A stretch of 58,362 bases of DNA, filler included, from Dugesia japonica (Eukaryota): assembly GCA_001938525.1 (NCBI GenBank). It is 4 parts of 4 records of this genome, joined end to end, with 100 filler letters (N's around TTAATTAATTAA, not from the genome) between each part and the next. Parts side by side here need not be neighbours in the genome. Positions count along the whole stretch, not along the records: positions 8,950 to 24,970 come from MQRL01607713.1; 3 more parts are not named here. One strand, written 5' to 3'. The notes under the pieces are model-generated. The model did no database searches. It had not been told where the DNA came from and was given only the letters and a program-made list of their open reading frames with translations. Positions 8,950-24,970 of this stretch are shown here, piece by piece. The position numbers and the translations under genes are program-made. Every line of letters starts with the position of its first letter. Position 1 is the stretch's first letter.

Positions 8950-9191
8950 GACTAAATTAACATTCTGACATTTATCGATAATTTATTTTTATGTTTTATA
9001 TGTGCAGTTGTAATAATTTCTTTAATTCTATTTTTTATATTTTTATACAATTATAATAAATTTTATAATTTTCATTACAAATTAAATTGTATATTATATT
9101 GATTACAATTTCAATATTAACCGTAAACAATTTGTTATCTACTAATGATATTAATGAATCCATGAATTGCTAAAAACTTCTAAATATAAAC

Positions 9192-9665
9192 CAGCGTTTT
9201 CCAAACTATGAGACGGGCCTCCTTAGGGAGGCACGAATATTAGTCACAGTGAGTAATTTTCCAAATGACTGCTAAAGTTTTATCTGTAAGAAATGGAAGA
9301 ATAAATAATAAAATATTTTTATTGACAAGCACATCCATCTCATTAAAAAACAATAATAAAATATCGTTATTATTTAGCTCGTTTAGTTATAGAAAAAGTG
9401 CTACAAGTAGCTATTTCGTCACTAACACCAAGATTTGATAAACTATGTGCTACTAGACATATGTACACATTCATCTCATTAAAAAAACAATAATAAAATA
9501 TCGTTATTATTTTGTTTTGTTTTCCATTATTTTTTATTAATGAATTTTTTAGCAGTAAAAATTTTTGTGTTTGTATTATGTTATGAAATTGAGGAGGGAG
9601 AGGAGGCGCCAAATGATTAAATATTTTGAAGGGAGGCGTAGTAACATCAAGTTTTGAAACCACTG
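9192..9665. mobile_element. hAT-type MITE with 8-bp target-site duplication
   Basis: Imperfect TIRs CAGCGTTTTCCAAACT ... AGTTTTGAAACCACTG. Perfect TSD ATATAAAC at 9184-9191 and 9666-9673. Internal ~45-bp direct duplication (about 9330-9375 and 9466-9512). Confidence 0.85.
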
Positions 9666-10349
9666 ATATAAACAACGGAAACTTTTTATAATTTGAATAT
9701 AAAATTTTTAATTTAGTTGTAGAATTTTATGACAGATAGTGGAAATTTGTATGTATTTTTATTATGCATGCGTTACGATCGCTAGTATAAATAGCAATGT
9801 ATTTTAATTAATTATGAATTGTAGAAAAACTCAATCTTTTATTTTGAACGATCCAGTGTAAAAATATTAATTTATTTTGTAGTCACTATTTGTCTTAGTT
9901 AATAAATTGTTTAAAGTGGTTTTGCTACTATTCATATTGGACTCATTATATAAGATGTTTATAGCGATATTATGCTATCTATATTAAACTTATTAAGGTT
10001 CCATAGGAATATTTATATAACTACAGTATACTAATAAAATTTAATTAAATATATTATTGTTGATCTGTTTCGGAAAATAACACGTAAACCAAAATATGGA
10101 TTATAATAAAATAACATATAAACCCACACACTTGTTGATTTGCTTTAACACTAATCCCTTAAGCATCTCAAAACTACAATAATGTACCATCATTTATCTG
10201 CAATGTTTCGCTACCTTTGTTGAAATCTTTCTACTCCAGGATCAACCCATTCGGTAGTAAGGGTTTACTATAAAGAAATTTATCATCTATTACGACTACG
10301 TTCTCATGAAGCTCCTGTAAAATTCGTCGTGCCCATTCTCCCTATATAT

Positions 10350-10490
10350 TTTTCTGATAGCTGTTTAACGTGTGAGACATCAACCTGGCACAAATATTCT
10401 GCTTGTTCAGATCATATCGAAGAATGCTTTGTTTTGTTAACTAGCTCAATCATGTTTGCAAACAGAAAGAATTGATGGTCATCTAATAAA
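10350..10490 (-). pseudogene. Mariner transposase fragment
   Basis: Minus-strand translation SILRYDLNKQNICARLMSHTLNSYQK resembles the mariner motif IL..DL..RK.CARWVPH.L...QK. Confidence 0.6.
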
Positions 10491-10721
10491 CTATAATAAT
10501 AATATATATGCTACAGCCTAATATAATGAAATTTAAAATTTATGAAAAATAAAAATAAAAAATAAAAGGGAATTAAAATANNNNNNNNNNNNNNNNNNNN
10601 NNNNNNNNNNNNNNNNNNNNNNNNNNNNNNNNNNNNNNNNNNNNNNNNNNNNNNNNNNNNNNNNNNNNNNNNNNNNNNAAATTTTCCATCCAACATGTTA
10701 TGAATATTATATATAATTAAG

Positions 10722-11136
10722 GTATTATGGGATTTTGACAAAATTCAAGAATTGAAATGGTTCACTATTCACAATCTAGAAATTAATTGGGATTTATCTT
10801 TGAGTTTATTAAAAAAAGTAAAAATAATTTAGAATTCTTTTTTTTATTTTGGTTATTAGTCTTTGTTAGATAAAAGTATTTTGGATGCAGAACTGACTGA
10901 TTCTCAAATGGAAGAATTTTATAGAATTTGTCTAGAAATCAATTATCCAATTGTGAAGCATATTTCCATTGAAAACGGTGCAATTTAAACATTTTTACTT
11001 TATTAATTTTAAGTCTATTAAATTTTTTTCTGAAAAATAATCCAGAAAAATTGAACATAATATACAAAGTCAAAGATGAATTGTTGTCGGAGAGAAATTC
11101 ACGAAGTCTTACAATGCTTGATTACATATTTAGGAA
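10722..11136 (+). CDS. Three-exon chain of an unidentified helical protein (possibly gasdermin C-terminal-like; may be a pseudogene)
   Basis: Exons 10722-10817 (VLWDFDKIQELKWFTIHNLEINWDLSLSLLKK), 10860-10977 (SLLDKSILDAELTDSQMEEFYRICLEINYPIVKHISIEN) and 11046-11136 (EKLNIIYKVKDELLSERNSRSLTMLDYIFR) are joined in frame by GT..AG introns of 42 and 68 nt. Confidence 0.5.
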
Positions 11137-11274
11137 GTAAAACCGTATCGCAATTTCATTGGATAATAAAAATTCTTACTTAATTGTTTCTTATATCTCT
11201 ATAGCGAACAAAATCTATTTTGTCATTTCTAGTGTTTCTTATAGACAGGTTTGACTGTATATTAATAAAAAAAA

Positions 11275-11278
11275 TAAA

Positions 11279-11343
<65 letters not shown>

Positions 11344-11475
11344 NNNNNNNNNNNNNNNNNNNNNNNNNNNNNNNNNNNNNNNNNNNNNNNNNNNNNNNNN
11401 NNNNNNNNNNNNNNNNNNNNNNNNNNNNNNNNNNNNNNNNNNNNNNNNNNNNNNNNNNNNNNNNNNNNNNNNNNN

Positions 11476-11545
<70 letters not shown>
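11275..11545. repeat. (AAT)n / (TAT)n-(CAT)n microsatellites flanking a gap
   Basis: Trinucleotide runs are directly visible. Confidence 0.95.
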
Positions 11546-12120
11546 CTATACCTGAAAATGATAGTTAACCTATTGAAAGATCTTTTACCAAAATATATTT
11601 TAAAATAGCGCTTGAAGTCAACTTTTAAATGTAGATCGAAAATGGATAATTGAGATAAAAAAATCAAATAAAAACCTATTTAAAATTTGAAGAATTATTA
11701 CAAAATAACTTTGTAAAATAACAAATTGTGATTTATACCTATTGAAACAATTTTCTCAGTTAAATATTTTCGAAATATTTCGCCAAAATATATTTGTATT
11801 TTTAGATCTTTTCAATTTATCGTGTGACGTTAAAAATATCTGGTTAGTATTTTAATTATTTTATTTTATGCCATCAAAATATATTTATTTAGGTTTTATT
11901 TATAATAATAAAGAAGAGTTAATTATTAAATAAACTTTTTAGCTTAAAATAGCTTAGAGAAAAAATATTTTCTAGAATATAAATAATACTAAAATTAAAT
12001 TTGCATTTTTTCATCTGTCATATTTTTTGTTTAATCAACCATTGATCTGTAATTAAATAATTTGAATATTTTTATGANNNNNNNNNNNNNNNTGAAGATG
12101 CGAAAAAATCTTTTGTTATG

Positions 12121-12210
12121 TTATTCCTAATTTTCGATTGTCTTCTTCAAGGGCGAATAATTAAGTGAAACACTCTTGAAGAAGACAACAGTCGGAAATT
12201 TGGGATAACT
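12121..12210. repeat. Inverted pair of hammerhead-like motifs
   Basis: TTTTCGATTGTCTTCTTCAAG (minus copy) ... CTTGAAGAAGACAACAGTCGGAAATTT (plus copy). Confidence 0.5.
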
Positions 12211-12439
12211 TTAATATAAATAAAATTTGATCCACTCATTAGTTTTCGTATATTTTCATAAAATTATTCAATTTAATATAATTATTTAAAAAATTATTGT
12301 ACATTAAAACAAATATTGCACTACATTAGGTAATAAATAACGACAAACTTAAATACTAATTATCATTTTTTATCTTAGAAATATTTGCTACTGATAATTT
12401 ATGAGAAACAGTCTTTTTAGAATAATTTACAAGGTTTAC

Positions 12440-13110
12440 AGATTAACTTCCAACTTAATCAGACTTGATAAATAGAAATAACAATTAATTATTTTCGCAT
12501 TAGGATATGATTGTGCCATTTGACTATCAAAAATTTTTCACTGTCACCTATGATTTATTCTAATTTAAAATTAATTTCGAATATACTAAAATACTAAAAG
12601 TGAAAAATCAGGATCACAGACCTTGTCAATGTGCCAATATTTTACATTTTCAATTGTATTTAGAATACTTTTATAAGTAAATATCGACATCATACTAGCT
12701 TGATCAACGCAAAATATAACCTTATTGGCATTATCTTTTAAATCTTTCAACTTATTCATAGTATCTTGCATATAAATCAACGGTTTCTCATTTTTATTGT
12801 AAGGCCTGCATTTTTAAATTTATTGTAAAGATGATTTGCTTCAGTAGACAGACCTTTAATTTCAAGAGACTTTTAATTAATCTGGGTATTTTTTACCAGC
12901 ATTATAGGATTCTTTTATAACCTCATCAACTTTTTGAATAATCGTATTTTTCTGAGGACCAGAACATTCATGAGTAATCGAATAATTTCTTTCTTAAGTA
13001 ACATTTCCACTTGAATCTACTATCTTTCTTAATTTTTTTTATACAATTCTTATTCAAAGATTATTATCCAAATACCATGTTCTGCTTGTTATTTTAAAAC
13101 CATGACAAAA
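12440..13110 (-). mobile_element. Mutator (MULE, FLYWCH-type) transposase remnant
   Basis: Broken frames contain KWKC..., YWHID-KVCDPDFSLL (cf. W.xDGTFKVCP..F.QL) and GDSEK...AQSYPNAKIINCYFYLS (cf. DFE.A..NA...FP...I.GC.FH). Confidence 0.7.
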
Positions 13111-13345
13111 AATACTATTTTAAAAATTTTAATTGAAAAGTTTTATTTAAACAATTAGCTGAAAAGGTTACTTATCCAAAATAACGAGACAACTCACATA
13201 ACTAAGTAACAACTTTTAGTTTATGCATGAGTAAAAATTATATTGAAGTATGTTTAAAATATTTTCCAGTTTCAATTTGATCAATCAAGTATGTTGCAGT
13301 GGCACAGCATTTTAGTATATATCTGTTTTTATTTTCAGTCGGAAA

Positions 13346-13507
13346 ATGTCGAATACGAAAAATAATCAACGTATTAACATTAAATTCCTTGTGAAACTTA
13401 AAAGTCAACAGAAGTGACTTGCCAAATGTTATCTGAAGCTTATAGTAAGGAATGCTTATCTCGCATACGTGTCTTTGAATGGCACAAAAGAATTTCAGAA
13501 GGCAGAT
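13346..13507 (+). pseudogene. Mariner transposase N-terminal HTH fragment
   Basis: MSNTKNNQRINIKFLVKLK, then after a frameshift TCQMLSEAYSKECLSRIRVFEWHKRISEGR. Confidence 0.8.
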
Positions 13508-14107
13508 TATCAGAAATTGATGTATATCTTTAAAGTTGAAACTTCTTAGTTTGTCGCTATCTATATAAAAGAAACTGAACTTAAACAGTTTTTATTGTAT
13601 TATAATTATTCTACATGTATTTTTTACATTTTTTAATTTACTGAATGATCTTTCTCCGAAATAATTAGACATTTTCTAAATATTGTTTCCACGTTTGAAA
13701 AGATCGATTCCAATTTATAGTTGTATAGTTAATATCTATATATGAACTGACTTTTTTAAATTACTCTATTTATTTAGTTTTTCATTCAAGTTAAAGAAAT
13801 GAGATCCTTTGCTGTAGCCACTTAAGCTTATTGGTAAAAGTGAGACTGTTTAAAATTACCAATATTTGACCTTAAAATAACCTTAATATACTTTTCATTA
13901 TAATATATCTAAAATAATTTTTGTGCAAAAATATCGTAAATGAAATTTTATTCCTCCAATATTTAAAACACTTTGCAATAAAGTCACTCTAATTAATTTG
14001 AAAACAAAAAATACATGTTTAAAGTTACTTATAAATTTTATAAGTACAACTAATTCTGTTTTTATGCGATTCAAAGATACGCGGTAACTCTGGTAAAAAG
14101 AATTAGG

Positions 14108-14109
14108 TA

Positions 14110-14180
<71 letters not shown>
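14108..14180. repeat. (ATCT)n tetranucleotide microsatellite
   Basis: Directly visible; runs into a gap. Confidence 0.95.
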
Positions 14181-15136
14181 NNNNNNNNNNNNNNNNNNNN
14201 NNNNNNNNNNNNNNNNNNNNNNNNNNNNNNNNNNNNNNNNNNNNNNNNNNNNNNNNNNNNNNNNNNNNNNNNNNNNNNNNNNNNNNNNNNNNNNNNNNNN
14301 NNNNNNNNNNNNNNNNNNNNNNNNNNNNNNNNNNNNNNNNNNNNNNNNNNNNNNNNNNNNNNNNNNNNNNNGTATAAGAGTGTCGTAGATTCTTCGCATC
14401 ACATGATTTAGTGATTATTTCTATAAATGTGTTATAACAAGTACCGACAAAGTTTTTCTCATGAAAATTGTTTTAAATAAAAAATATTTAAACCACGTAA
14501 AAACAAAGTGCAATATTTGTTCTGGAATAATGTAAAACTAAATTAGCGAAAACACAGAATTAAGTGTAATTTCAAACACGTATATTTTAATACCGAAAAA
14601 AACGGGATTGTCTTTATCATTTCCGGTTTCGGTATTTCCGGGATGGGAAACCCTAGGTTTCATTCATTCTAATAAACAAAATTCAAATTACTAACTATTC
14701 ATATCATTCAATTTAAAATAAAATGACATTTGTTGTTTTAATGTAAACTCTACTCATAAATAGTTTTTATTTATTTTGTTTTTGTAAAAAAATTTATTTA
14801 TTTAGTTTCACTAAATTGATGAATTCTATTGACGAAAGTGAAAGCTATTTGAAGGTTATTGGCAAACAATTGAAAATAGAAAAATACATTTATAACTTGC
14901 CTGAAGGTTGTTTTTAGAAATTTATCATTTTTATGCATTAATATAAAGCTATATAACAGGGGTGCATTGACCTTTTTAGGTTTGTTAACTTGATTAAAAT
15001 CCGAATACAAATCCATACATTTATTAATTAAAAATCATATCTAATCCGAAAAACTGAATATTAAAACAACGATATTAAACATTAATTTAAAATAATTTAT
15101 TTTAATTCTGATTTTCAATTTTAAATAATATCTCAT

Positions 15137-17773
15137 ATCCCCCCCGAAAAAATTACTTTAACTTTCCCACATTTCTTTCTATTCGTCTCCCATCATCTCT
15201 CTTCAATAAGTGTCTTCGGTCATGTACTTTTTTACTATCTGGTAAGGGCCCTCAAAACGTTCCTGGTCTTTGTTCCGGTTTTCTAGCACTTCCTCTCCAT
15301 CTTTGAAAGTTCTTTTGGTTGTCGTCTTTGGTGCCGTCTTCTCAGCTACTTGTTGGTTCCAGTTTTTCCTTGCTATTTTTCCCAACATAAATTCTGCTGG
15401 GCAAAATAACAAATTCTATTTCTGGCAGTAATTCAGCCCAATCTGTACTCTTTCTGTCTTCTAATGTTGCATTTGACAAATCCTGTACTGTCCTGAACTA
15501 TCTCTCAATTTGCCCATTCGTATTATGGTGATACGGGCCCGAAAAACATAATTCTACGTTCTATCTATTGGAAAATTCGCCCATTGCCTAAGATTCGAAA
15601 GACCGTCCACAGTTCACGTGAATGCGTATTTGGCAACCAAACTTGAGCAGCCAATTATGCAAAATGACTTTCTGGATTGTGTTCTCATCGTGCTTGCGGA
15701 TTGCTACCAAACCATGTACTTGCTACATTGGTCTATTATTCCGAGGATATACTTCATCTGTCTCGTCGTCTCCTTGAATGGACCACATATGTCTACATAT
15801 ATAATTGTGAAGATCATTGTGGCTCGTACTTTCGCGGTTTCTTCTTTGGCTTTTACAGTCAAGACTTTGTGTTTCTAACACGCCTGGCACGCGCTTATAA
15901 TTTATTTGATCTTTGTCTTCAGATTCTTTATTTTATATCTGTCCCTCATATACTGGAACATCATTTCCGGACCCACGTGTGTAAGTAGTCTATGCGTCTT
16001 CTGAATAGCCTCCTCGGCTTCTTTCCTTGACATTCCTTTTGTCTCGCTATCTAGACCTTTCTCTATTCCATTCAGCCTCCGCGTTCTAGGTTTCTCCAGT
16101 TTAGCTTTTTCGTGTTGGGTTTGGTATTGTACGCAAGTCTCGCATTCTGGTCTTGACACCATGTCCGCATTACTGTGTAGTTCCCCCTTTCGATATTTGA
16201 TACTCATGTCCAGGCTACTAAGGAAATTTAACCAATTTCAAAACTGCGCTTTGATCGGTTTCTTCGTAGATAACATGAACGATAGTGCCTTGTAGTCTGT
16301 GTGTAGCCGAAATTTCCTACCGTATAAATAATAATTAAAATGTTTACGAAAGTAAAATATGGCTAGAAGTTCCTTCCTTGTCACGCAATAGCCTCTTTCA
16401 TGATTGCTCAATCAATGTGACCAGTATGCTATCACCCTTTCTCTGCCGTTGACATTTTTCTGCGATAACACTGCTCCTATTGCGCCAAAACTGGCGTCTG
16501 TATCGAGGATAAAATCTTTTGTAAGGTCCGGGAATCTCAAAATTGAGCTTTTAGTAAGCGCCATTTTTAAATTCTCGAATGCTTCCTCTGCCGTTTGATT
16601 CCAGTCTAGTTTCTTGTCAGTCCTTCCACACATCCTTTCTAAAATTCCTGCTTTCTCCGCGTATTCTTCTATGAATTTGCGGTATTAATTGCAAATCCCT
16701 AAAAAGCTCCTTATGTTTTTGACTCATTTAAGCTTATTATAATTTTTGATAGCATCTATTTTCCCCGGATCCATGTATATTCCTTCCTTNNNNNNNNNNN
16801 NNNNNNNNNNNNNNNNNNNNNNNNNNNNNNNNNNNNNNNNNNTCTATCGTCTCCAGTTTACTATTATTAGCGCATCTCAGTTTTTCCTCACAATTTTTAG
16901 TCTCTATGTCTTTCAACTTCTTTGCTATATTCCAACTCATCACATTTATTGGGGCTCCTGTATCTCAAAGGCACTCCAAAACCTGTCCAGCCATCTTAAC
17001 TGTGACGCTGGGTCTCCCTTTGCATTTTGTCGTAGTGTATTATTGCCCCTGACACGTCTCCAATTACTCCTATCGCATCGTCATCTCTTTTTTTCTCTGT
17101 CCCAAAGCTTTCTCTTTTCAAAAATTTATATACCTTCTCTGCCACTTCCTGATCCAATTCAACTCTCTCGTTCTCTTGGGGTATCATAGTCACAGTACTT
17201 AGTTAATGGCTCCGACTATCTCATTCATTCTTGCCGTTTTAATAAAAACCGCAAGCGTTGTGGTTTTAAAATTTCTCACAATTGNNNNNNNNNNNNNNNN
17301 NNNNNNNNNNNNNNNNNNNNNNNNNNNNNNNNNNCTATCGTCTCCAGTTTACTATTATTAGCGCATCTCAGTTTTTCCTCACAATTTTTAGTCTCTATGT
17401 CTTTCAACCTCTTTGCTATATTCCAACTCATCACATTTATTGGGGCTCCTGTATCTCAAAGGCACTCCAAAACCTGTCTAGTTATCTTAACTGTGACGCT
17501 GGGTCTTCCCTGCATTTTGTCGTAGTGTTTTATCGCCCCTGACACGTCTTCAATTACTCTTATCGCATCGTCATCTCTTTTTTTCTCTGTCCCAAAGCTT
17601 TCTCTTTTCAAAAATTTATATACGTTCTCTGCCACTTCCTGATCCAATTCACCTCTCTCGTTCTCTTGGGGTATCATAGTCACAGTACTTAGTTAATGGC
17701 TCCGACTATCTCATTGATTCTTGCCGTTTTAATAAAAACCGCAAGCGTTGTGGTTTTAAAATTTCTCACAATT
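15137..17773 (-). mobile_element. Ty3/Gypsy LTR retrotransposon, decayed
   Basis: Protease region, RT connection/RNase H (LRFPDLTKDFILDTDASFGAIGAVLSQ...VIAYWS; YRKGELHSNADMVSR), integrase (H.GP..M; GPYHH.TNGQIER; EGPYQIV). Polypurine tract GGGGGG(G)A next to the LTR start at about 15137-15145. Confidence 0.9.
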
Positions 17774-18311
17774 AAACATTGCATTTACGCTGTATAAATT
17801 TTCAAATGAAAAATTTTTATTAAACAGTTTATACTAAACATTTGCATTTAAAAACTTTTTCAATTAAAAATTTTTTAAAATCTCTACAATTAAATTTTAC
17901 ATTTACATTTATAAACTTATGCTAATAAACATTGTTTTTAATTAAAACCTTTACAATTAAAATTTTGAAAAATTTAAAAATTTACGCTTTTTTAAAAATA
18001 TCTAAAAGGTTTATTCAACGATAACAAATATTAATCACGTGAAGGAACACACCGAGTATGAATGTACAAATTGACTCAAATATGAAGTTAATAATATATA
18101 AGCTAATATTTATATATTTTAAAAATCTTTTAAATGTTAATTTTGAATTATTAAGTGATTTATCTGATTTTGTTTCTTTTAATTAGCCCTAAATGAACCA
18201 TCGGTACCAAATATTGTAATTAACAATAAAGGTAATTTTTTTATATACTGTTTTCATTAAATTCATTTATTAGATAATCAAACGAAACTTTCAAATATGA
18301 AATCTAGTCAA

Positions 18312-18327
18312 GTAATAATAATAATAA

Positions 18328-18384
<57 letters not shown>
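18312..18384. repeat. (AAT)n microsatellite
   Basis: Directly visible. Confidence 0.95.
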
Positions 18385-18911
18385 NNNNNNNNNNNNNNNN
18401 NNNNNNNNNNNNNNNNNNNNNNNNNNNNNNNNNNNNNNNNNNNNNNNNNNNNNNNNNNNNNNNNNNNNNNNNNNNNNNNNNNNNNNNNNNNNNNNNNNNN
18501 NNNNNNNNNNNNNNNNNNNNNNNNNNNNNNNNNNNNNNNNNNNNCATATTAAATAAAGGTGGTGGACAATTTTGGTAGAAAATTGGATTATTTTTAAATA
18601 TTAGAAATTCAATCCCAAACCTTCTTTGTTAATGAAAATTAAATGTTGTTATAGAACCAATGAAATTTCGATGTGGCTAAATCATGTTATTGTTGATCTA
18701 AAGAGTATGAAAAATTATCTTAATAACATCTTATTTGATAATCCATTTTATTGGATATCTTTCATGTGTAATTGAGTTGTAGGTGTTTACGAATGAATTA
18801 TAATGTAATAATATAATAATTTAAGTAATAATAAAAAAATGTTTTTTAAATATCTATTTTTATATTTTTTTAGTTAACCTTTGGGAAATTTTTATTTGAA
18901 TTGTTATTTAG

Positions 18912-19097
18912 AATAATGTGATGGCAGAACCATCTGCTGATGTACAGAAAATAGAAATTTCTAACATACTGAAGGAAGAAGAAATTGAATTACAAAAAGT
19001 TTTATTTAGAAACAAGGCTTATGCTATGGTAATAAATGTTATAAGAAAATTGCTGAATGAACTGGACGAAATTTTTATTTCAAATAATAATAAATGA
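18912..19097 (+). CDS. Candidate terminal exon of an unidentified gene (possibly the 10.7-11.1 kb chain)
   Basis: A TTATTTAG acceptor is followed by the open frame NNVMAEPSADVQKIEISNILKEEEIELQKVLFRNKAYAMVINVIRKLLNELDEIFISNNNK-stop. An exon-like segment at about 18605-18704 (KFNPKPSLLMKIKCCYRTNEISMWLNHVIVDLK) does not join it cleanly in phase. Confidence 0.35.
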   Translation, partial: NNVMAEPSADVQKIEISNILKEEEIELQKVLFRNKAYAMVINVIRKLLNELDEIFISNNNK

Positions 19098-21740
19098 TGT
19101 TATTTGATTTACTAATATGTTTACTTTCATGATTTTATTTTTATAAATTTTTCGTTATTTTTAAATTAGACGAACTTTCAATTGGCAAGGAGATACAAAT
19201 TTGATTAATATTGTAAAATAAATAAAAGATTAAGCACAAATGAAACAAAATAAAAAATTTAAAAAATCAAAAAAAATTAATTTACATATAAGTGTAAGAT
19301 TAGATTGATTGCAGATTTAAATTTTTTTTGAAATTTCCTCTTTGATTTATTCAAATTTTAAAAATAAATTTACTCAATATTATTTGAAAATAAATTAAAT
19401 TAAATTGATACAAAAAATTGTTATAAAATATACTTTGGATTTTAAAATACTTTTTTATTTTTATTCATAAAATCAATAGTAAATTAAAAATTTTATTGCA
19501 ATATTTGATTTTAAAATCAGAAATCCTCAATTTTAGTAATTATAGAAATTTNTCCTGAACGCTGATGTTATTTGGTTCTTTTTAATTTGTTGGAGAAAAG
19601 CAAATATAATTCTGTCTCATTTATTAAATTAATAAATTTATGGATATTAAAAATCATTTAAATTCTCAGATTTACTTAAAAATATAAACAGAATTTTTCC
19701 CCAAAAAAGTGCTGTTAAGAATTGGAAAAGTTATAATGATACATGATAAGACCTGGCAAATGGGAAGAATGGAGCAGAATTTCACATCACAGTTTCATAA
19801 ATGTTTATCTTACGATCCTCTTATTAAGTCATTTCACATTATCAAACTAGAATAACATCTTTCATCTAATCAAAAATATATGATTCTTTAACGGTTTCTG
19901 TGATTTAAGTAGTTTAAAGTTAATCAAACTGTAAATTATTCTCCAAACACACACAAACCTTAATTCCATAAATACTGGAGCTTGGATATTTTCGGTGCCT
20001 TAACTTTAAAAATATATTGCTTTTTTACTATTAGTTAACCAATGATATGGGAACTATAAATTCAACAAATTCAAACCATTCAACAACTAACCAATATTTG
20101 AGGACAGTTAATTCGTATTAGTTAAATTATCAATAGCATACGTTTCCATAATAAATTTATTTAATATTGCAAAATTGAGTTGAATTATTTCAAAAGTTAA
20201 AAAGATGAATATTCAAACCAAATAACTAGGTAGATAGTAGCGCATAAGAACATCCCTCAACACAGACAAAGTATTCTAAGAATTCGGTATTTGGAAAATT
20301 CCTGCAATTTGATTAGTATATATTTTTCAGTAGAAATAAATTTTGATTTCGAATTTTATTAGTCAAAAATCGGGATTGGAAGTTTTGAATTTTAGTTCAA
20401 GTATTTCTAGGTTGAAATTAATTGTATAGTTTCGCATTTAGTACCATTCAACTCAAAATAAAAGGTTTTTAAAATATTGTCTAAAGGAGTATTATCACAA
20501 CATATTTCATTCTCACTGAAGAGATGTAGCGCATCGAAACATTTTTAATAATAATAATAGTTATAGTTATAATTATAAAAAATAATAATTATACTTAGTA
20601 CAGTTTGGTACCATTGGAATCAGAATCAAAAACTCTTTATGTATTATTGCCCTTTATGATCTGAAAATAAAGTCAGGGCTCCTTTAAAAATCTAGAATCC
20701 TTTTATCGGCTGTGACATAAAATTTGANNNNNNNNNNNNNNNNNNNNNNNNNNNNNNNNNNNNNNNNNNNNNNNNNNNNNAAAAAATACATATGACAACT
20801 TTTACTTAAAAAACCCTAATTAGAATAGAACCTTGCAGTTTTACTTGCATGATTTATCAGTATTCCAATTTATGATTAATGATTTTACAAAACTATTAAA
20901 ATCATTTTAGTAAATAATTTTAAAAATATATTAAAAAAATAAAATATATAGTGTGATATATTTTAATTTTTTAGAGTTTATAATAAAAAATTCAAGGCTC
21001 CCTTAAAAATTCTTCGTGACCTCCTATTAAGAATCACTTGTCTAAAGGATTACTATCGAAAAACGCTTCTTCTCATAGTCCCTACCCGTCTCGACGGCAA
21101 GAGGTTCTAAGATTTTAATGTTAAGAAAACTCCTGCAATTTGATTGGCTTAAAATTTTCATATGTCAAAATATTTGAAAATAAATTCTTTGAGATTATTA
21201 AAATGAAGATCCTTTGCTCCTAAAGTTCTTTAATTATTCAATAATAATATAATATAACCTATTNNNNNNNNNNNNNNNNNNNNNNNNNNNNNNNNNNNNN
21301 NNNNNTATTTTAACCACCTGTTAATTAGACATTTGATTAAATATTATTTTAATTTTTTGAAATCTAAGTTTCATCATATGAAAAGTATTTCGTTTTTAAT
21401 TATTTTCTTTTTACTTCACCTTTAAAACATTTATTCAAATGAAAAGCTTAACAATATGTAAATCAGAGTTTAAATTTAAAATGTTTGATTACATTGTAAA
21501 TCTGACATGAATTCCTTAAAATTAATAATAAAAGATTAAATAGACATTATTTTTTTGTAGAATAATTTAATAAACGTTTACAAAGAAATGTTTTCAAAAT
21601 AATTAATATCTTAATGGAAATGAATTTTCATATTAGAAAATATTATGAGTTGTTTTAATTAGTTAATTTAAGCAATATTTTAGAATCAGAATTTTGAATT
21701 ATTAATATTTTTTGTCGAAAAAATGAATCAAATTTAATTT

Positions 21741-22413
21741 ATGCTTAAATTAGCAGCAAAACAATACCTCAGTTCTCTCGGAGATCGATATTTTGTTCCT
21801 GTAATTTTTAAATCATTTATTCCGAAATTTATATAGTGACATATTAGAATCCAAACTATGCAGAATGGGCCGATGTTGATTGTTTAGATATTGCCATAAA
21901 ACGGAAATCAGAATATCCTTGGCAAAAAGACATTTATTCATACGATCATTTTTCGTTGAACGATTTATTGGATTCTCCTTTGACAACTGATAAATCTATT
22001 TATTTAAAAAATCCAGAACCATTAACATCAAATTTTGTTTGGACTTCCAAGCATAATATTAAAGGAAAACTAGGTGGAAAACTTGCATCTATAATATCAC
22101 TCGATTTATCTGCAAATGATATTATTTCCATAACTTTTCACATGGAAAATGTTGTCAAACAGTCAATTAACTTTCCAGCTGTTATACAATTGTTGAAAAC
22201 AAAGTTATTCTTTTCAATTTTTTAAGTACAATCAGTTAAGTTAATTAATTAAGGAAAATCGATGTTAATTGTAAATATTTCAAAGGTTTATTGCGTAATA
22301 AAAAAAAGAAACTTTGCTTGGTGACGCAATATATTTATTTGACGAAGCAAACCGAAATAAAAATTGATATTGTTTGGGATCTTAATCAAACCGGATCTAA
22401 ATCACAACTCAAG
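21741..22413 (+). CDS. Gasdermin (GSDME/pejvakin-like) N-terminal pore-forming domain, first three coding exons (3' partial)
   Basis: Exons 21741-21800, 21848-22203 and 22254-22413 are joined in frame by GT..AG introns of 47 and 50 nt, and a donor AAG|GTATAA follows. The 192-aa product is MLKLAAKQYLSSLGDRYFVPNPNYAEWADVDCLDIAIKRKSEYPWQKDIYSYDHFSLNDLL...VVKQSINFPAVIQLLKTKKIDVNCKYFKGLLRNKKKKLCLVTQYIYLTKQTEI.... It is colinear with GSDME/PJVK motifs MFxxATxxFxxxxG, LxLVxKKK..WQ..Y....TL.D.L, KQEVD, I.L...LCV.TQ.I. Confidence 0.85.
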
Positions 22414-22461
22414 GTATAAAAAAAATTATAAAATATTATTTTAATTTTACAGTATAAAAAG

Positions 22462-22500
<39 letters not shown>

Positions 22501-22550
22501 NNNNNNNNNNNNNNNNNNNNNNNNNNNNNNNNNNNNNNNNNNNNNNNNNN

Positions 22551-24970
22551 ATAATAGCGATAATAGCGATGGAAGAATTTGGAGTGTGGTTAAAGTGAAT
22601 GGTAGAGGTGTGGAGATGTTATGGGACACAAGAACATTGATTTCAGTAATGGATATGAATGCTTGGAAAAGATGTGGTTCGTTTCCATTGGAAAATTCAG
22701 AGATAAAATTGAGTGAAGCATTTTTGAAGGAAGCCGTTAAATGCTTAGGCGTCGGAAAAGTGAAAATTGAGTACCATAATATGAACGAAACTGTCAATTT
22801 AGTGGTAGTACAGAGTATAAGCCCAGAATTCATTGGTGGAATAAACCTGTTCAATGTTTTTAATATTCAATTAAAAATGATTGGATTAATCAACTCAGAT
22901 AATGTAATGTGTGATGTTTCTGATGAGGATCGTTTAAGAGTCACTATGGACGGTTTCAAACCAAGAGATGACATCTTGAAAAAATTGTTAACGCGTTTCA
23001 ACTCGATATTCATGGCGCATACGTTTGATCTTGGTAAAACACACCTAGTTAAGCATCCTATCCAAACAACGGGAAATCCTGTCTTACAACAGTTAAGGCC
23101 ACAACCGATGCATCGAGAAGGCAAGATTGATGAGATGATTAAAACACTTGTCAAAAGCGGAATCATAAAAGAATGCAGTAGCCCCTGGAACTCACCTATG
23201 GTGATTTTTAACAAAAAGAATGGAGCTATTCGTATGTGTCAGAATTTCAAATTATTGAATGAAGCAACTGATAAGTTTTCGTTTCTTATGCCAGATCCTC
23301 AAATGTTATTCGATCATCTTAGTGAGTGTACAATATTCTCAACACTAGATATAGGCCAAGCGTATTATCAAGTCGAACTTCTAGTCTTAAAGTAAATCCA
23401 GCCAAATGTAAACTTTATCAAGAAGAGCTCGTGTTTTTTGGATTAAAACCAAATTCGGAGAAAGTCAAGGAGATTNTTAATGCTGGAATTCCAAAATTTA
23501 CTAAACAATTGCGATCTTTTTTTGGAATTGCAAATTATTACAGGAAATTTATAAAGAATTTTTCGCAACTTGCCATACCTTTATATGCTGCTACAGAAGG
23601 TCAAAAGCGAGACGAGTTTCTGGAAAATCAAGAAGCTCTTTTTAATTCTCCAGTATTGGGGTATCCTAATTCAGAAGGTCAATTTATTCTGGAATTGGTG
23701 CTGTACTGAGTCAATCACAAAATGGTATGGAAGTCGTTATACCATATCGATCAAGGTTGTTGAATGCACATGAAAAAGGAAATTGTGTGACCAGGAAAAG
23801 GTTATTGGCTCTTTATGAATTTATTTGACATTTTCGGCATTATCTTTATGGGAAAAGTTTTGTCACAAGAACAGATCACAAAGCTTTAGAGTTTATAAAG
23901 AATTCAAAAAATCGATTACGCCACAGTTTCAGACTTGGATGAACAAATTATCAGAATATGATTTCGTATTGAAGTATAGAAAAGAGGAACATCATTCCAA
24001 CGCTGATGGTATGTCAAGACTGATGTCTAGTTATTGTTCACAATGCCAGATTAAACATGAAAATGCCAAGTCTAAATCGTCTAAGGTAAAATATTTAAAT
24101 GTTATGAACGTTTCCAGAAGTGATTCGCACAATTACATAAAGGAATTTGAAGAAGACGAATTATTTAAGGAAATCAAAATTCATTTGATGGACAAATCTG
24201 TTAAATTATCANAAACGTTAAATCTTCCCAGTATTTTAAATATTTGAATAGGTTTTTAATTAAAGACGATATGCTGCTAATTGAGTCAGATGATGAGCAA
24301 AAGATAGTGGTTCCTAAAAGATGCGTAACTAATTTTGTGAACAAAATTCATNNNNNNNNNNNNNNNNNNNNNNNNNNNNNNNNNNNNNNNNNNNNNNNNN
24401 NNNNNNNNNNNNNNNNNNNNNNNNNNNNNNNNNNNNNNNNNNNNNNNNNNNNNNNNNNNNNNTATACACAGAAAGGTTAGTAATGAGAAAGTTAAGGAAA
24501 AACTTATACCAAAATACGCAGCTAACCCGATGGAACAAATCGTGATAGATGTTGCATATATGGATAACAGTAATTCGAACAAAAAATACATGATAGTCAC
24601 AATTGATCAATTCAGTAAGTTAGTTAGTCTTATTGCAACCACAAATCAAAACGATAACACAATCAAAAGTGTATTGTTAAATAACTGGATTTACAAATAT
24701 GGAAAACCTAAACGTATTGTTTCTGATCGAGGAAGAGTATTTAAAGGAAAGGTTTTACAAGAGTTGGCTTCAAGATTTCATATTTCGTGGATATTTACAT
24801 CTCCCATGAGCATAAGTCAAAAGGTTTAGCAGAGCGCGCAATTAGAACTGTTAGAGATATGATAGTAACATCTTTGAAATCTGGAGGAGAGGAGAAGTAT
24901 TGGGATGAAATCTTTCCAAAAGTTGAGTTTTCATTTAATTGCACGATATCAAAGGCGACAGAATTCTCTC
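22551..24970 (+). mobile_element. Ty3/Gypsy LTR retrotransposon pol, decayed, downstream of the gasdermin exon-3 donor
   Basis: Protease (LWDT), RT (SSPWNSPMV..KKNGAIRMC..F..LN; FSTLDIGQAYYQV), connection (LRSFFGIANYYRKFI), RNase H (HSNADGMSRL), integrase (IDQFSK; IVSDRGR; GLAERAIRTV). Multiple frameshifts. Confidence 0.93.

What the first reader, a model, noticed from the sequence alone, without database searches (positions are those of the whole stretch)
21741..22413. Hidden, highly divergent gasdermin (pyroptotic pore-former) gene split by tiny introns
Seen in sequence: three exons splice in frame to 192 aa, whereas the ORF track shows only an uninformative 89-aa piece. Established knowledge: the product follows the GSDME/pejvakin N-terminal pattern, with an alpha-1 helix (MLKLAAKQYLSSLG), a basic/aromatic beta1-beta2 lipid-binding loop (IKRKSEYPWQKDIY), FSLNDLL, alternating beta-hairpin segments, KQSIN and KID…LCLVTQYI. 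Invertebrate gasdermins are known from cnidarians, molluscs and deuterostomes but are reported missing from insects and nematodes. Inference: this AT-rich, short-intron animal retains a fast-evolving lytic cell-death effector that may be unannotated in its lineage. As I recall, vertebrate GSDME has introns at equivalent positions (phase 2 before the xIxL strand, phase 0 after the next exon); this needs checking.
Basis: partly seen in the sequence, partly recalled or inferred. Interest (0 to 1): 0.9.

Follow-up and report, generated by a model that had tools for sequence, protein, structure and literature searches.

The report
Divergent gasdermin gene, first three exons
The stretch holds the first three exons (192 codons) of a real, very divergent gasdermin-E/pejvakin-type pore-forming cell-death gene in an AT-rich animal genome. 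The rest of the gene lies beyond a gap and a decayed retrotransposon, so it is a new member of a known family rather than a new kind of thing.

Summary
Exons 21741-21800, 21848-22203 and 22254-22413, separated by 47- and 50-nt GT-AG introns, read in frame for 192 codons.

The gasdermin reading is supported:
- Exon 2 alone finds, among 1.84 billion representatives, a 469-aa protein P0001 (59% identity, E 1.7e-37). P0001 passes Pfam Gasdermin PF04598, and its first 192 residues match the three exons exactly at the proposed junctions.
- Exon 2 also finds gasdermin-E/pejvakin-like proteins of acorn worms, a jellyfish and a coral.
- A local profile of seven Pfam-validated gasdermins scores the X-joined product at 97 bits; the best of 5000 shuffles scores 10.7.
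- The P0001 model matches only gasdermins in the PDB.
- The phase-2 intron after exon 2 sits at the same split codon in four other genomic gasdermin loci.

Limits:
- Only profile positions 1-190 of about 240 are in the piece. The last strands, the linker and any C-terminal domain are missing. Exon 3 ends at a GT donor, followed by a microsatellite, 50 N and a degraded Ty3/gypsy element.
- The organism is coded.

Verdict: new member of a known kind, moderately interesting.

The parts
21741..21800 (+). Coding exon 1: start codon plus 19 codons, the alpha-1 helix (MLKLAAKQYLSSLGDRYFVP). Ends in phase 0.
   Evidence: Translation. A stop lies immediately upstream in frame (stop-free segment starts at 21738). 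tblastn of P0001 residues 1-20 matches at 70% identity. Profile positions 1-21.
21801..21847 (+). Intron 1: 47 nt, GT..AG, 19% GC, phase 0. Absent from the Glandiceps gasdermin-E-like gene.
   Evidence: The relative P0001 reads FFVPNPNF without a break across this junction. P0004 exon 1 runs uninterrupted to codon 135.67.
21848..22203 (+). Coding exon 2: 118 codons plus two bases. Holds the beta1-beta2 basic/aromatic loop (KRKSEYPWQK) and the first extension region with long strands.
   Evidence: phmmer E 1.7e-37 to P0001 residues 21-137. 121 bits to profile positions 21-137. The invariant W, L, G, G, D and K columns are kept.
22204..22253 (+). Intron 2: 50 nt, GT..AG, 18% GC, phase 2. Its position is conserved in other animal gasdermin genes.
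   Evidence: Same alignment column and phase as intron 1 of the Glandiceps gene. An AG|GT or AA|GT donor sits at the same split codon in L003, L004, L005 and L006.
22254..22413 (+). Coding exon 3: one base plus 53 codons (KIDVN...LCLVTQYIYL...SKSQLK). Ends in phase 0.
   Evidence: Translation. tblastn to P0001 residues 138-192. 30.6 bits to profile positions 136-190.
22414..22500 (+). Start of intron 3: GT donor at 22414, 5% GC, running into an (ATA)n microsatellite. Unspliced read-through would stop after two more codons.
   Evidence: The Glandiceps gene has a phase-0 intron two alignment columns away.
22501..22550 (.). Run of 50 N. I did not fill it. What follows exon 3 in the genome is therefore unknown.
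22552..24970 (+). Context, not part of the gene: a degraded Ty3/gypsy-type retroelement pol (protease-like, RT, integrase), broken into several frames and cut by the piece's edge. No gasdermin exon lies inside it.
   Evidence: Pfam RVT_1 and rve hits. ORF fragments in several frames. Best database relatives are 39-42% identical, and P0012 carries RT domains. No profile hit for positions 191-422.

Best explanation
This is the 5' part (three coding exons, 192 codons) of a gasdermin gene of the GSDME/pejvakin ('invertebrate GSDM') type in an AT-rich animal genome with tiny introns.

Shown here:
- The encoded peptide is homologous to the gasdermin pore-forming domain, profile positions 1 to about 190 of 240.
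- It shares an ancient phase-2 intron with other animal gasdermin genes.
- Its closest relative is a full-length 469-aa transcript product whose N-domain is predicted to fold as a gasdermin.

Inferred:
- The gene is alive. Exon 3 is probably spliced to further exons that lie beyond the gap and the decayed retrotransposon, outside this piece.
- The full protein would consist of a pore-forming domain held inactive by a C-terminal part.
- A caspase-type protease would cut the linker. The freed N-domain would bind acidic lipids through the basic alpha-1 helix and the basic/aromatic beta1-beta2 loop, oligomerise, and insert two beta-hairpins to make a lytic pore.
For: Homology:
- Exhaustive phmmer with exon 2 gives P0001 at E 1.7e-37 (59% identity, residues 21-137) and seven further true hits at E 5e-6 to 6e-4.
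- Seven of these eight relatives pass Pfam PF04598 above its cut-off.
- Named hits are gasdermin-E-like from Glandiceps and Rhopilema, pejvakin-like from Saccoglossus, and a Montipora protein.
- A local profile of seven Pfam-validated gasdermins, without P0001, scores the X-joined product at 97.3 bits (E 2.4e-28), collinear through both junctions. The best of 5000 shuffles scores 10.7 bits.
- The six-frame scan finds only the three exons.
- In the PDB, the family profile hits GSDME N-terminal chains at 4e-38 and P0001 alone hits them at 8.8e-11.
- The N-domain of the P0001 model has pLDDT around 80-90. Its top 37 Foldseek hits are all gasdermins.
- Language-model features of exon 2 and of P0001 point to gasdermin clusters.

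Splicing:
- tblastn of P0001 breaks exactly at the proposed junctions.
- The phase-2 donor lies at the same split codon in five loci.

A live gene:
- Exons are intact and splice sites canonical, while the neighbouring retroelement is decayed.
- pN is 0.27 against a saturated pS of 0.79 in comparison with the relative.
- Thirteen runs from seven studies, seven of them guessed by the tool to be RNA and six of unassigned kind, hold 0.47-0.62 of the sampled words. Exon-only words would give 0.57. Runs guessed to be DNA hold 0.70-0.96.

Mechanism:
- P0001 has DxxD motifs at residues 248 and 270 in a low-confidence linker.
- Caspase-cleaved GSDME-type pyroptosis has been shown in Hydra (PMC10361584). 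PMC10948149 cites it for coral and molluscs.
Against: - No exon alone reaches any Pfam family, even at E 10. Exon 2 alone finds no solved gasdermin.
- The exon-2-only model is of low confidence and has no fold match.
- Profile positions 191-422 are absent from the whole piece, so completeness, the linker and the C-terminal domain are unknown for this gene.
- The C-terminal 230 aa of P0001 have no Pfam match, no detectable similarity to other gasdermin C-domains, and pLDDT below 50.
- The beta1-beta2 loop is weaker than the consensus: RWxW has become EYPW.
Confidence: 0.8

Rival explanations
1. It is a stranded 5' fragment. A gasdermin gene was cut after exon 3 by the retrotransposon insertion or a rearrangement. 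The three exons are a young relic, perhaps still transcribed, that can no longer make a complete pore-forming domain.
For: Nothing matching profile positions 191-422 exists anywhere in the 16-kb piece. Exon 3 is followed by a microsatellite, a gap and a retroelement that lacks its own 5' end. Read-through of the donor stops after two codons.
Against: All three exons are open and all four splice signals are intact in DNA where a codon is a stop about 9.5% of the time. The adjacent retroelement, by contrast, is heavily decayed, so an old disruption should have decayed the exons too. The piece ends 2.5 kb after the gap, so downstream exons may simply lie outside it. Thirteen runs hold an exon-sized share of the words.
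Confidence: 0.22
2. It is an intact gasdermin-family gene that is not a lytic effector. It would be a pejvakin-like protein with a non-pyroptotic role, or a decoy or regulator.
For: Language-model features place the N-domain of P0001 nearest a pejvakin cluster, score 0.97. One close hit is named pejvakin-like. The lipid-binding loop is degenerate. The C-terminal part of P0001 is unlike known repressor domains. PMC11508797 notes that pejvakin has shown no pyroptosis-inducing capacity.
Against: Names such as pejvakin-like are automatic. The basic alpha-1 helix, the KRK plus aromatic loop and the invariant G-K-x-G, D and K columns are kept. P0001 carries DxxD motifs in its linker, as caspase-activated GSDME-type proteins do.
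Confidence: 0.2
3. It is a short gasdermin of the Trichoplax or microbial style that ends near here, for example by retention of intron 3 (194 aa), and is regulated without a C-terminal domain.
For: The Trichoplax gasdermin structure is among the best fold matches of the relative, TM 0.71. An in-frame stop lies two codons into intron 3.
Against: The closest relative continues collinearly to 469 aa. The domain would lack its last three core strands, P0001 residues 205-234. The phase-0 intron position here is shared, within two alignment columns, with a gene that continues.
Confidence: 0.04
4. It is a chance set of open frames in AT-rich DNA, or retrotransposon-derived sequence, and not a gasdermin.
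For: No Pfam hit for single exons. Other long stop-free stretches without homology exist in the piece.
Against: E 1.7e-37 to a Pfam-validated gasdermin in a library of 1.8 billion proteins. 97 bits against 10.7 for the best of 5000 shuffles. Conserved intron position.
Confidence: 0.01

Closest known systems
P0001: unnamed 469-aa protein on an intronless 1842-nt contig of JGI sample 3300030569 (Ga0247628_1002603)
   Same: It is collinear with all three window exons at 70%, 59% and 42-49% identity, with the same start. It passes Pfam Gasdermin, and its N-domain folds as a gasdermin.
   Different: It comes from another organism: 55% overall identity, with synonymous sites saturated. It is complete, with 277 more residues that the piece lacks. 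It is the only member of this clade found.
Invertebrate gasdermin-E/pejvakin-like proteins ('GSDMin'): Glandiceps talaboti XP_077997778.1, Saccoglossus kowalevskii XP_006824139.1, Rhopilema esculentum XP_065052299.1, Montipora foliosa XP_068688511.1
   Same: Same domain, with 24-27% identity over exon 2. Invariant W, L, G-K-x-G, D and K columns are shared. The Glandiceps gene has the same phase-2 intron and a phase-0 intron within two alignment columns.
   Different: The window gene is much more divergent: no Pfam hit per exon, and a weakened beta1-beta2 loop. It has an extra phase-0 intron after codon 20 and introns of about 50 nt rather than kilobases.
Human GSDME N-terminal domain and pore (PDB 9h5m, 9vlz, 9pe0)
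   Same: These are the best solved relatives, both by sequence profile (4e-38 for the family profile, 8.8e-11 for P0001) and by fold (1.4e-10).
   Different: Exon 2 alone does not detect them. Cleavage site, C-terminal repressor domain and activity are unknown for the window gene.
HyGSDME of Hydra, and coral and mollusc gasdermins (caspase-3-type cleavage leading to pyroptosis)
   Same: They are the functional precedent for an invertebrate GSDME-type lytic effector (PMC10361584, PMC10948149). The relative P0001 has DxxD motifs in its linker.
   Different: No activity or cleavage data exist for this clade.
Trichoplax adhaerens gasdermin (PDB 8jyv, 8jyw)
   Same: It gives the highest TM-score for the inactive-state fold, 0.71 with rmsd 3.4.
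   Different: It has a pore-forming domain only. Sequence similarity to P0001 is marginal, E 0.03.

Membership tests
Gasdermin pore-forming domain family (Pfam PF04598), GSDME/PJVK type | Significant sequence match to the pore-forming-domain profile | tested here: met
   Single exons get no Pfam hit at E 10, and the joined product could not be sent to Pfam by reference. A local profile of seven proteins that each pass PF04598 scores the X-joined product at 97.3 bits (E 2.4e-28) against 10.7 bits for the best of 5000 shuffles. The six-frame scan gives 121, 30.6 and 8.5 bits for the three exons. The closest relative P0001 scores 55.8 bits on PF04598, whose cut-off is 25.
Gasdermin pore-forming domain family (Pfam PF04598), GSDME/PJVK type | Gasdermin N-domain fold | tested here: inconclusive
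   For the window's own exon 2 the AF2 model has pLDDT 53 and no fold match, although its order of strands and helices mirrors P0001 residues 21-138. For P0001, which is 55% identical, the N-domain model has pLDDT around 80-90 and its top 37 PDB matches are all gasdermins.
Gasdermin pore-forming domain family (Pfam PF04598), GSDME/PJVK type | Basic alpha-1 helix and basic/aromatic beta1-beta2 loop used for lipid binding (established from GSDMA3 and GSDMD structures) | tested here: met
   K3 and K7 lie in MLKLAAKQYL. The loop KRKSEYPWQK aligns to the consensus KKxxRWxWQ and keeps the invariant second Trp. The first Trp is Tyr and the Arg is Glu, so the motif is weakened.
Gasdermin pore-forming domain family (Pfam PF04598), GSDME/PJVK type | Complete domain of about 240 positions, including the second membrane hairpin and the last core strands | tested here: inconclusive
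   The piece holds only profile positions 1-190. Nothing matches positions 191-422 on either strand. Exon 3 ends at a splice donor in front of a gap and the piece's edge, so absence from the genome cannot be concluded.
Gasdermin pore-forming domain family (Pfam PF04598), GSDME/PJVK type | Gene structure shared with animal gasdermin genes | tested here: met
   A phase-2 GT donor lies at the same split codon in the window, L003, L004, L005 and the annotated Glandiceps gene L006. The next intron is phase 0 in both the window and L006, two alignment columns apart. Not tested against vertebrate GSDME.
Two-domain, protease-activated gasdermins (GSDMA-E type) | C-terminal repressor domain and cleavable linker | tested here: inconclusive
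   These are not present in the piece. P0001 has 230 further residues with DxxD motifs at 248 and 270. That region has no Pfam Gasdermin_C hit, no BLASTP similarity to the Glandiceps or Montipora C-parts, and pLDDT below 50.
Two-domain, protease-activated gasdermins (GSDMA-E type) | Pore formation and lytic activity of the released N-domain | not testable with these tools
   This needs expression, liposome leakage and cleavage assays.

The most novel reading that the evidence does not exclude
The gene, together with its single relative P0001, marks a fast-evolving gasdermin clade in an animal lineage where no gasdermin has been reported. That lineage has tiny introns, extreme AT content and no CpG depletion. 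The clade has escaped annotation because no exon is recognisable on its own. If so, gasdermin-type lytic death would be testable in that lineage.
Probability: 0.3. Interest if true: 0.65.

Novelty: new member of a known kind. Interest (0 to 1): 0.5.

Why it matters
Published surveys find gasdermins only patchily among invertebrates. GSDME-type genes are reported in cnidarians, molluscs, annelids, brachiopods, echinoderms and lancelets, and pejvakin in hemichordates. They are reported absent from arthropods, nematodes and several other phyla (PMC11508797), with none in 3030 ecdysozoan genomes (PMC10948149).

This locus shows that a family member can be too divergent for per-exon domain scans, yet still be recoverable through one environmental relative and a conserved intron. 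That suggests some reported 'absences' could be failures of detection.

If the host lineage is one without a known gasdermin, the locus would give an entry point for studying pyroptosis-like death there. If the host is a cnidarian or another phylum already known to have GSDME, it is simply a divergent paralogue or orthologue.

Tried and rejected
- Pfam on each exon separately: nothing, even at E 10.
- Word-indexed protein search with exon 2 and with P0001: no hit besides P0001 itself. Between them these covered lengths 65-206 and 258-820 aa, so a 207-257-aa entry would have been missed.
- The third such search went on the retroelement in the hope of naming the organism. It gave only 39-42% relatives from an unnamed ENA assembly.
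- Exon 2 alone against PDB sequences: only a chance kallikrein match at E 0.1.
- AF2 of exon 2 alone: low confidence with no fold match, so uninformative.
- Exon 3 alone in the protein atlas: nothing.
- P0002 (a repetitive coiled-coil protein with 16 stretches) and P0008 (Ig domains) were rejected as spurious hits.
- The metagenome scan rediscovered only the P0001 contig.
- Rfam and tRNA scans of the upstream part of the piece (8950-20900): nothing.
- The bacterial promoter and terminator scan is irrelevant here.
After that I sent those places to no search tool and masked them in my BLAST and HMM scripts. Two local composition and stop-count scripts did read them.
- Text searches for the peptide and for gasdermin in flatworms found no report.
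- Organism identity: guesses from genome size, intron size and CpG ratio (flatworm-like or Hydra-like) could not be tested and are not relied on.
- The joined product was analysed only with X at both junctions. One script joined the exons internally to count codons and printed lengths only.
- No N run was filled.

Full report
**1. Observation**

- Exon 1 is 21741-21800, ATG plus 19 codons.
- Intron 1 is 21801-21847: 47 nt, GT..AG, phase 0.
- Exon 2 is 21848-22203.
- Intron 2 is 22204-22253: 50 nt, GT..AG, phase 2.
- Exon 3 is 22254-22413, followed by GT at 22414.

Together they make 576 nt = 192 codons with no stop. The mechanical ORF list shows only an 89-aa piece.

Exons have 29-37% GC; introns and the upstream flank have 16-19%. 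With the flank's base composition a codon is a stop 9.5% of the time, so 192 open codons have a chance of about 5e-9. Two other stop-free runs of about 117 codons with no recognisable content exist in the piece. I therefore rest the case on homology, not on openness.

**2. What it is**

No exon on its own matches any Pfam family, even at E 10. The word-indexed protein search found nothing in its length range.

The exhaustive HMMER search of 1.84 billion representatives with exon 2 found ten proteins.
- The best is P0001: 469 aa, 59% identity, E 1.7e-37, with exon 2 aligned to its residues 21-137. That is exactly what a 20-codon first exon predicts.
- Seven of the ten pass Pfam Gasdermin PF04598 above its curated cut-off. 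P0001 scores 55.8 bits over profile positions 4-235 of 240.
- An eighth, P0009, has no Pfam hit but aligns with the seven over the same region.
- The remaining two are spurious, a repetitive coiled-coil protein and an Ig-domain protein.
- Source names identify the hits as gasdermin-E-like (Glandiceps talaboti, Rhopilema esculentum), pejvakin-like (Saccoglossus kowalevskii) and an uncharacterised Montipora protein.

tblastn of P0001 against the piece gives three segments that break exactly at the proposed splice sites. Residues 1-20 map to 21741-21800, residues 21-138 to 21848-22204, and residues 138-192 to 22252-22416.

I built a local profile from seven Pfam-validated gasdermins, leaving P0001 out. 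The window product, joined with X at both junctions, scores 97.3 bits (E 2.4e-28). The alignment is collinear over positions 1-181. The best of 5000 shuffles reaches 10.7 bits.

A six-frame scan of the whole piece with a full-length family profile lacking any window row finds just the three exons. They score 121, 30.6 and 8.5 bits, lie in order on the + strand, and nothing else scores.

Against solved structures:
- The family profile hits GSDME N-terminal chains at 4e-38.
- P0001 alone hits them at 8.8e-11.
- Exon 2 alone hits none.

An AlphaFold model of P0001 has a confident N-domain (pLDDT around 80-90 over residues 1-237). Its first 37 Foldseek matches are all gasdermins: GSDME, Trichoplax GSDM with TM 0.71, GSDMA3, GSDMD, GSDMB, bacterial gasdermins and RCD-1.

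The exon-2-only model is poor and has no fold match. Even so, its order of strands and helices is that of P0001 residues 21-138.

Language-model features agree with the gasdermin assignment. Exon 2 falls next to bacterial and eukaryotic gasdermin clusters. The N-domain of P0001 falls next to pejvakin and GSDME clusters at 0.92-0.97.

**3. Gene structure as independent evidence**

I mapped the annotated Glandiceps gene exactly onto its locus L006. Its first coding exon ends after codon 135 and two bases (phase 2). Its second ends after codon 192 (phase 0).

In a multiple alignment the window's intron 2 falls in the same column with the same phase. The window's intron 3 is phase 0 and two columns away, in a gappy region.

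At that same split codon the genomic loci L003, L004 and L005 also read AG|GT or AA|GT. They had been called as short ORFs that stop just past the homology. A phase-2 intron at this position is thus shared by five loci.

The window's intron 1 has no counterpart in Glandiceps.

**4. What is missing**

Nothing in the piece, on either strand, matches P0001 residues 193-469 or profile positions 191-422.

Beyond the donor at 22414 come, in order:
- about 85 nt of 5% GC sequence ending in (ATA)n;
- 50 N, which I did not fill;
- a Ty3/gypsy-type pol that starts abruptly in its protease region, is broken into many frames, and runs to the piece's edge.

So the 192 aa lack the last core strands (P0001 residues 205-234 in the model), the linker and any C-terminal domain.

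Two readings remain. The remaining exons may lie outside the piece, with the retroelement sitting in or after intron 3. Alternatively, the gene may be a stranded fragment.

- The exons and all splice signals are intact in very stop-prone DNA, while the retroelement next to them is old and decayed.
- pN is 0.27 against a saturated pS of 0.79 in comparison with the relative.
- Thirteen runs from seven studies hold 0.47-0.62 of the sampled 31-mers of 21600-22480. Seven of them are guessed by the tool to be RNA; the other six carry no guess. Purely exonic words would be 0.57.
- Runs guessed to be DNA hold 0.70-0.96 of the same words.

The last two points are indirect.

**5. How it most likely works**

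By homology with GSDME-type proteins, the full product would be kept inactive by its C-terminal part until a protease cuts the linker. The N-domain would then bind acidic lipids through the basic alpha-1 helix and the basic/aromatic beta1-beta2 loop, oligomerise, and refold two regions into membrane hairpins. This is established knowledge from the GSDMA3, GSDMD and GSDME pore structures.

The window keeps K3 and K7, the KRK...YPW loop and the invariant W, L, G-K-x-G, D and K columns. The loop is weaker than the consensus.

The relative P0001 has DxxD motifs at residues 248 and 270 in its low-confidence linker. That fits caspase-3-type activation as shown for Hydra GSDME (PMC10361584) and as cited for coral and molluscs (PMC10948149).

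The C-terminal 230 residues of P0001 are not recognisably a gasdermin repressor domain. A pejvakin-like, non-lytic role therefore cannot be excluded.

**6. Comparison and novelty**

This is a member, by homology, of the animal GSDME/PJVK-type gasdermins. It is unusually divergent, at 24-27% identity to named members over exon 2.

Its only close relative among the collections searched is a single unnamed protein on an intronless contig of JGI sample 3300030569. No near-identical protein is in the databases within the lengths searched.

The organism is coded. What can be said about it:
- The named relatives are hemichordate and cnidarian proteins.
- The introns are about 50 nt.
- Non-coding GC is about 16-24%.
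- The CpG observed/expected ratio is 0.95.

Surveys report GSDME-type genes in several invertebrate phyla, and report none in arthropods or nematodes (PMC11508797) or in 3030 ecdysozoan genomes (PMC10948149). Whether this lineage is new for the family could not be decided.

**Verdict**

This is a new member of a known kind. Interest is about 0.5; it would rise to about 0.65 if the host lineage turns out to be one without a known gasdermin.

Noticed in passing
window 22552-24970 (+): A degraded Ty3/gypsy-type retroelement pol. It has a protease-like start (LWDTRT where D-T/S-G is expected), an RT and an integrase core, split over at least six frames. It has no gag or LTR on its 5' side and is cut by the piece's edge.
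   Followed up: partly
window 15000-17800 (-): A second decayed retroelement with RT_RNaseH_2 and Integrase_H2C2 matches and higher GC (34-37%). It contains a 440-nt direct duplication, 16844-17283 and 17335-17773, at 96.8% identity, flanked by N runs.
   Followed up: partly
window 13241-13591 (-) and 9373-9726 (-): Two stop-free stretches of 117 and 118 codons in roughly 24% GC DNA, longer than chance predicts. Neither matches any Pfam family, and their translations look like AT-rich non-coding sequence.
   Followed up: partly
window 8950-24970: There is no CpG depletion (observed/expected 0.95), including in the retroelements. This suggests a genome with little or no CpG methylation.
   Followed up: no
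window 11220-11555, 18297-18578, 22460-22500: Long (AAT/ATA)n microsatellites border several N runs. The N runs vary in length from 1 to 191 nt.
   Followed up: no
L001 31-1440 (P0001 residues 238-469): The relative's C-terminal 230 residues show no detectable similarity to other gasdermin C-domains and fold with low confidence. Its linker carries DxxD motifs at 248 (DIFD) and 270 (DALD).
   Followed up: partly
L004 about 5030 and L005 about 284: In two other genomic gasdermin loci the exon homologous to window exon 2 seems to begin just before the VVKK strand, behind a CAG acceptor. Their upstream intron therefore lies about 12 codons downstream of the window's intron 1.
   Followed up: no
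I sent them to no search tool afterwards and masked them in my BLAST and HMM scripts.
   Followed up: no
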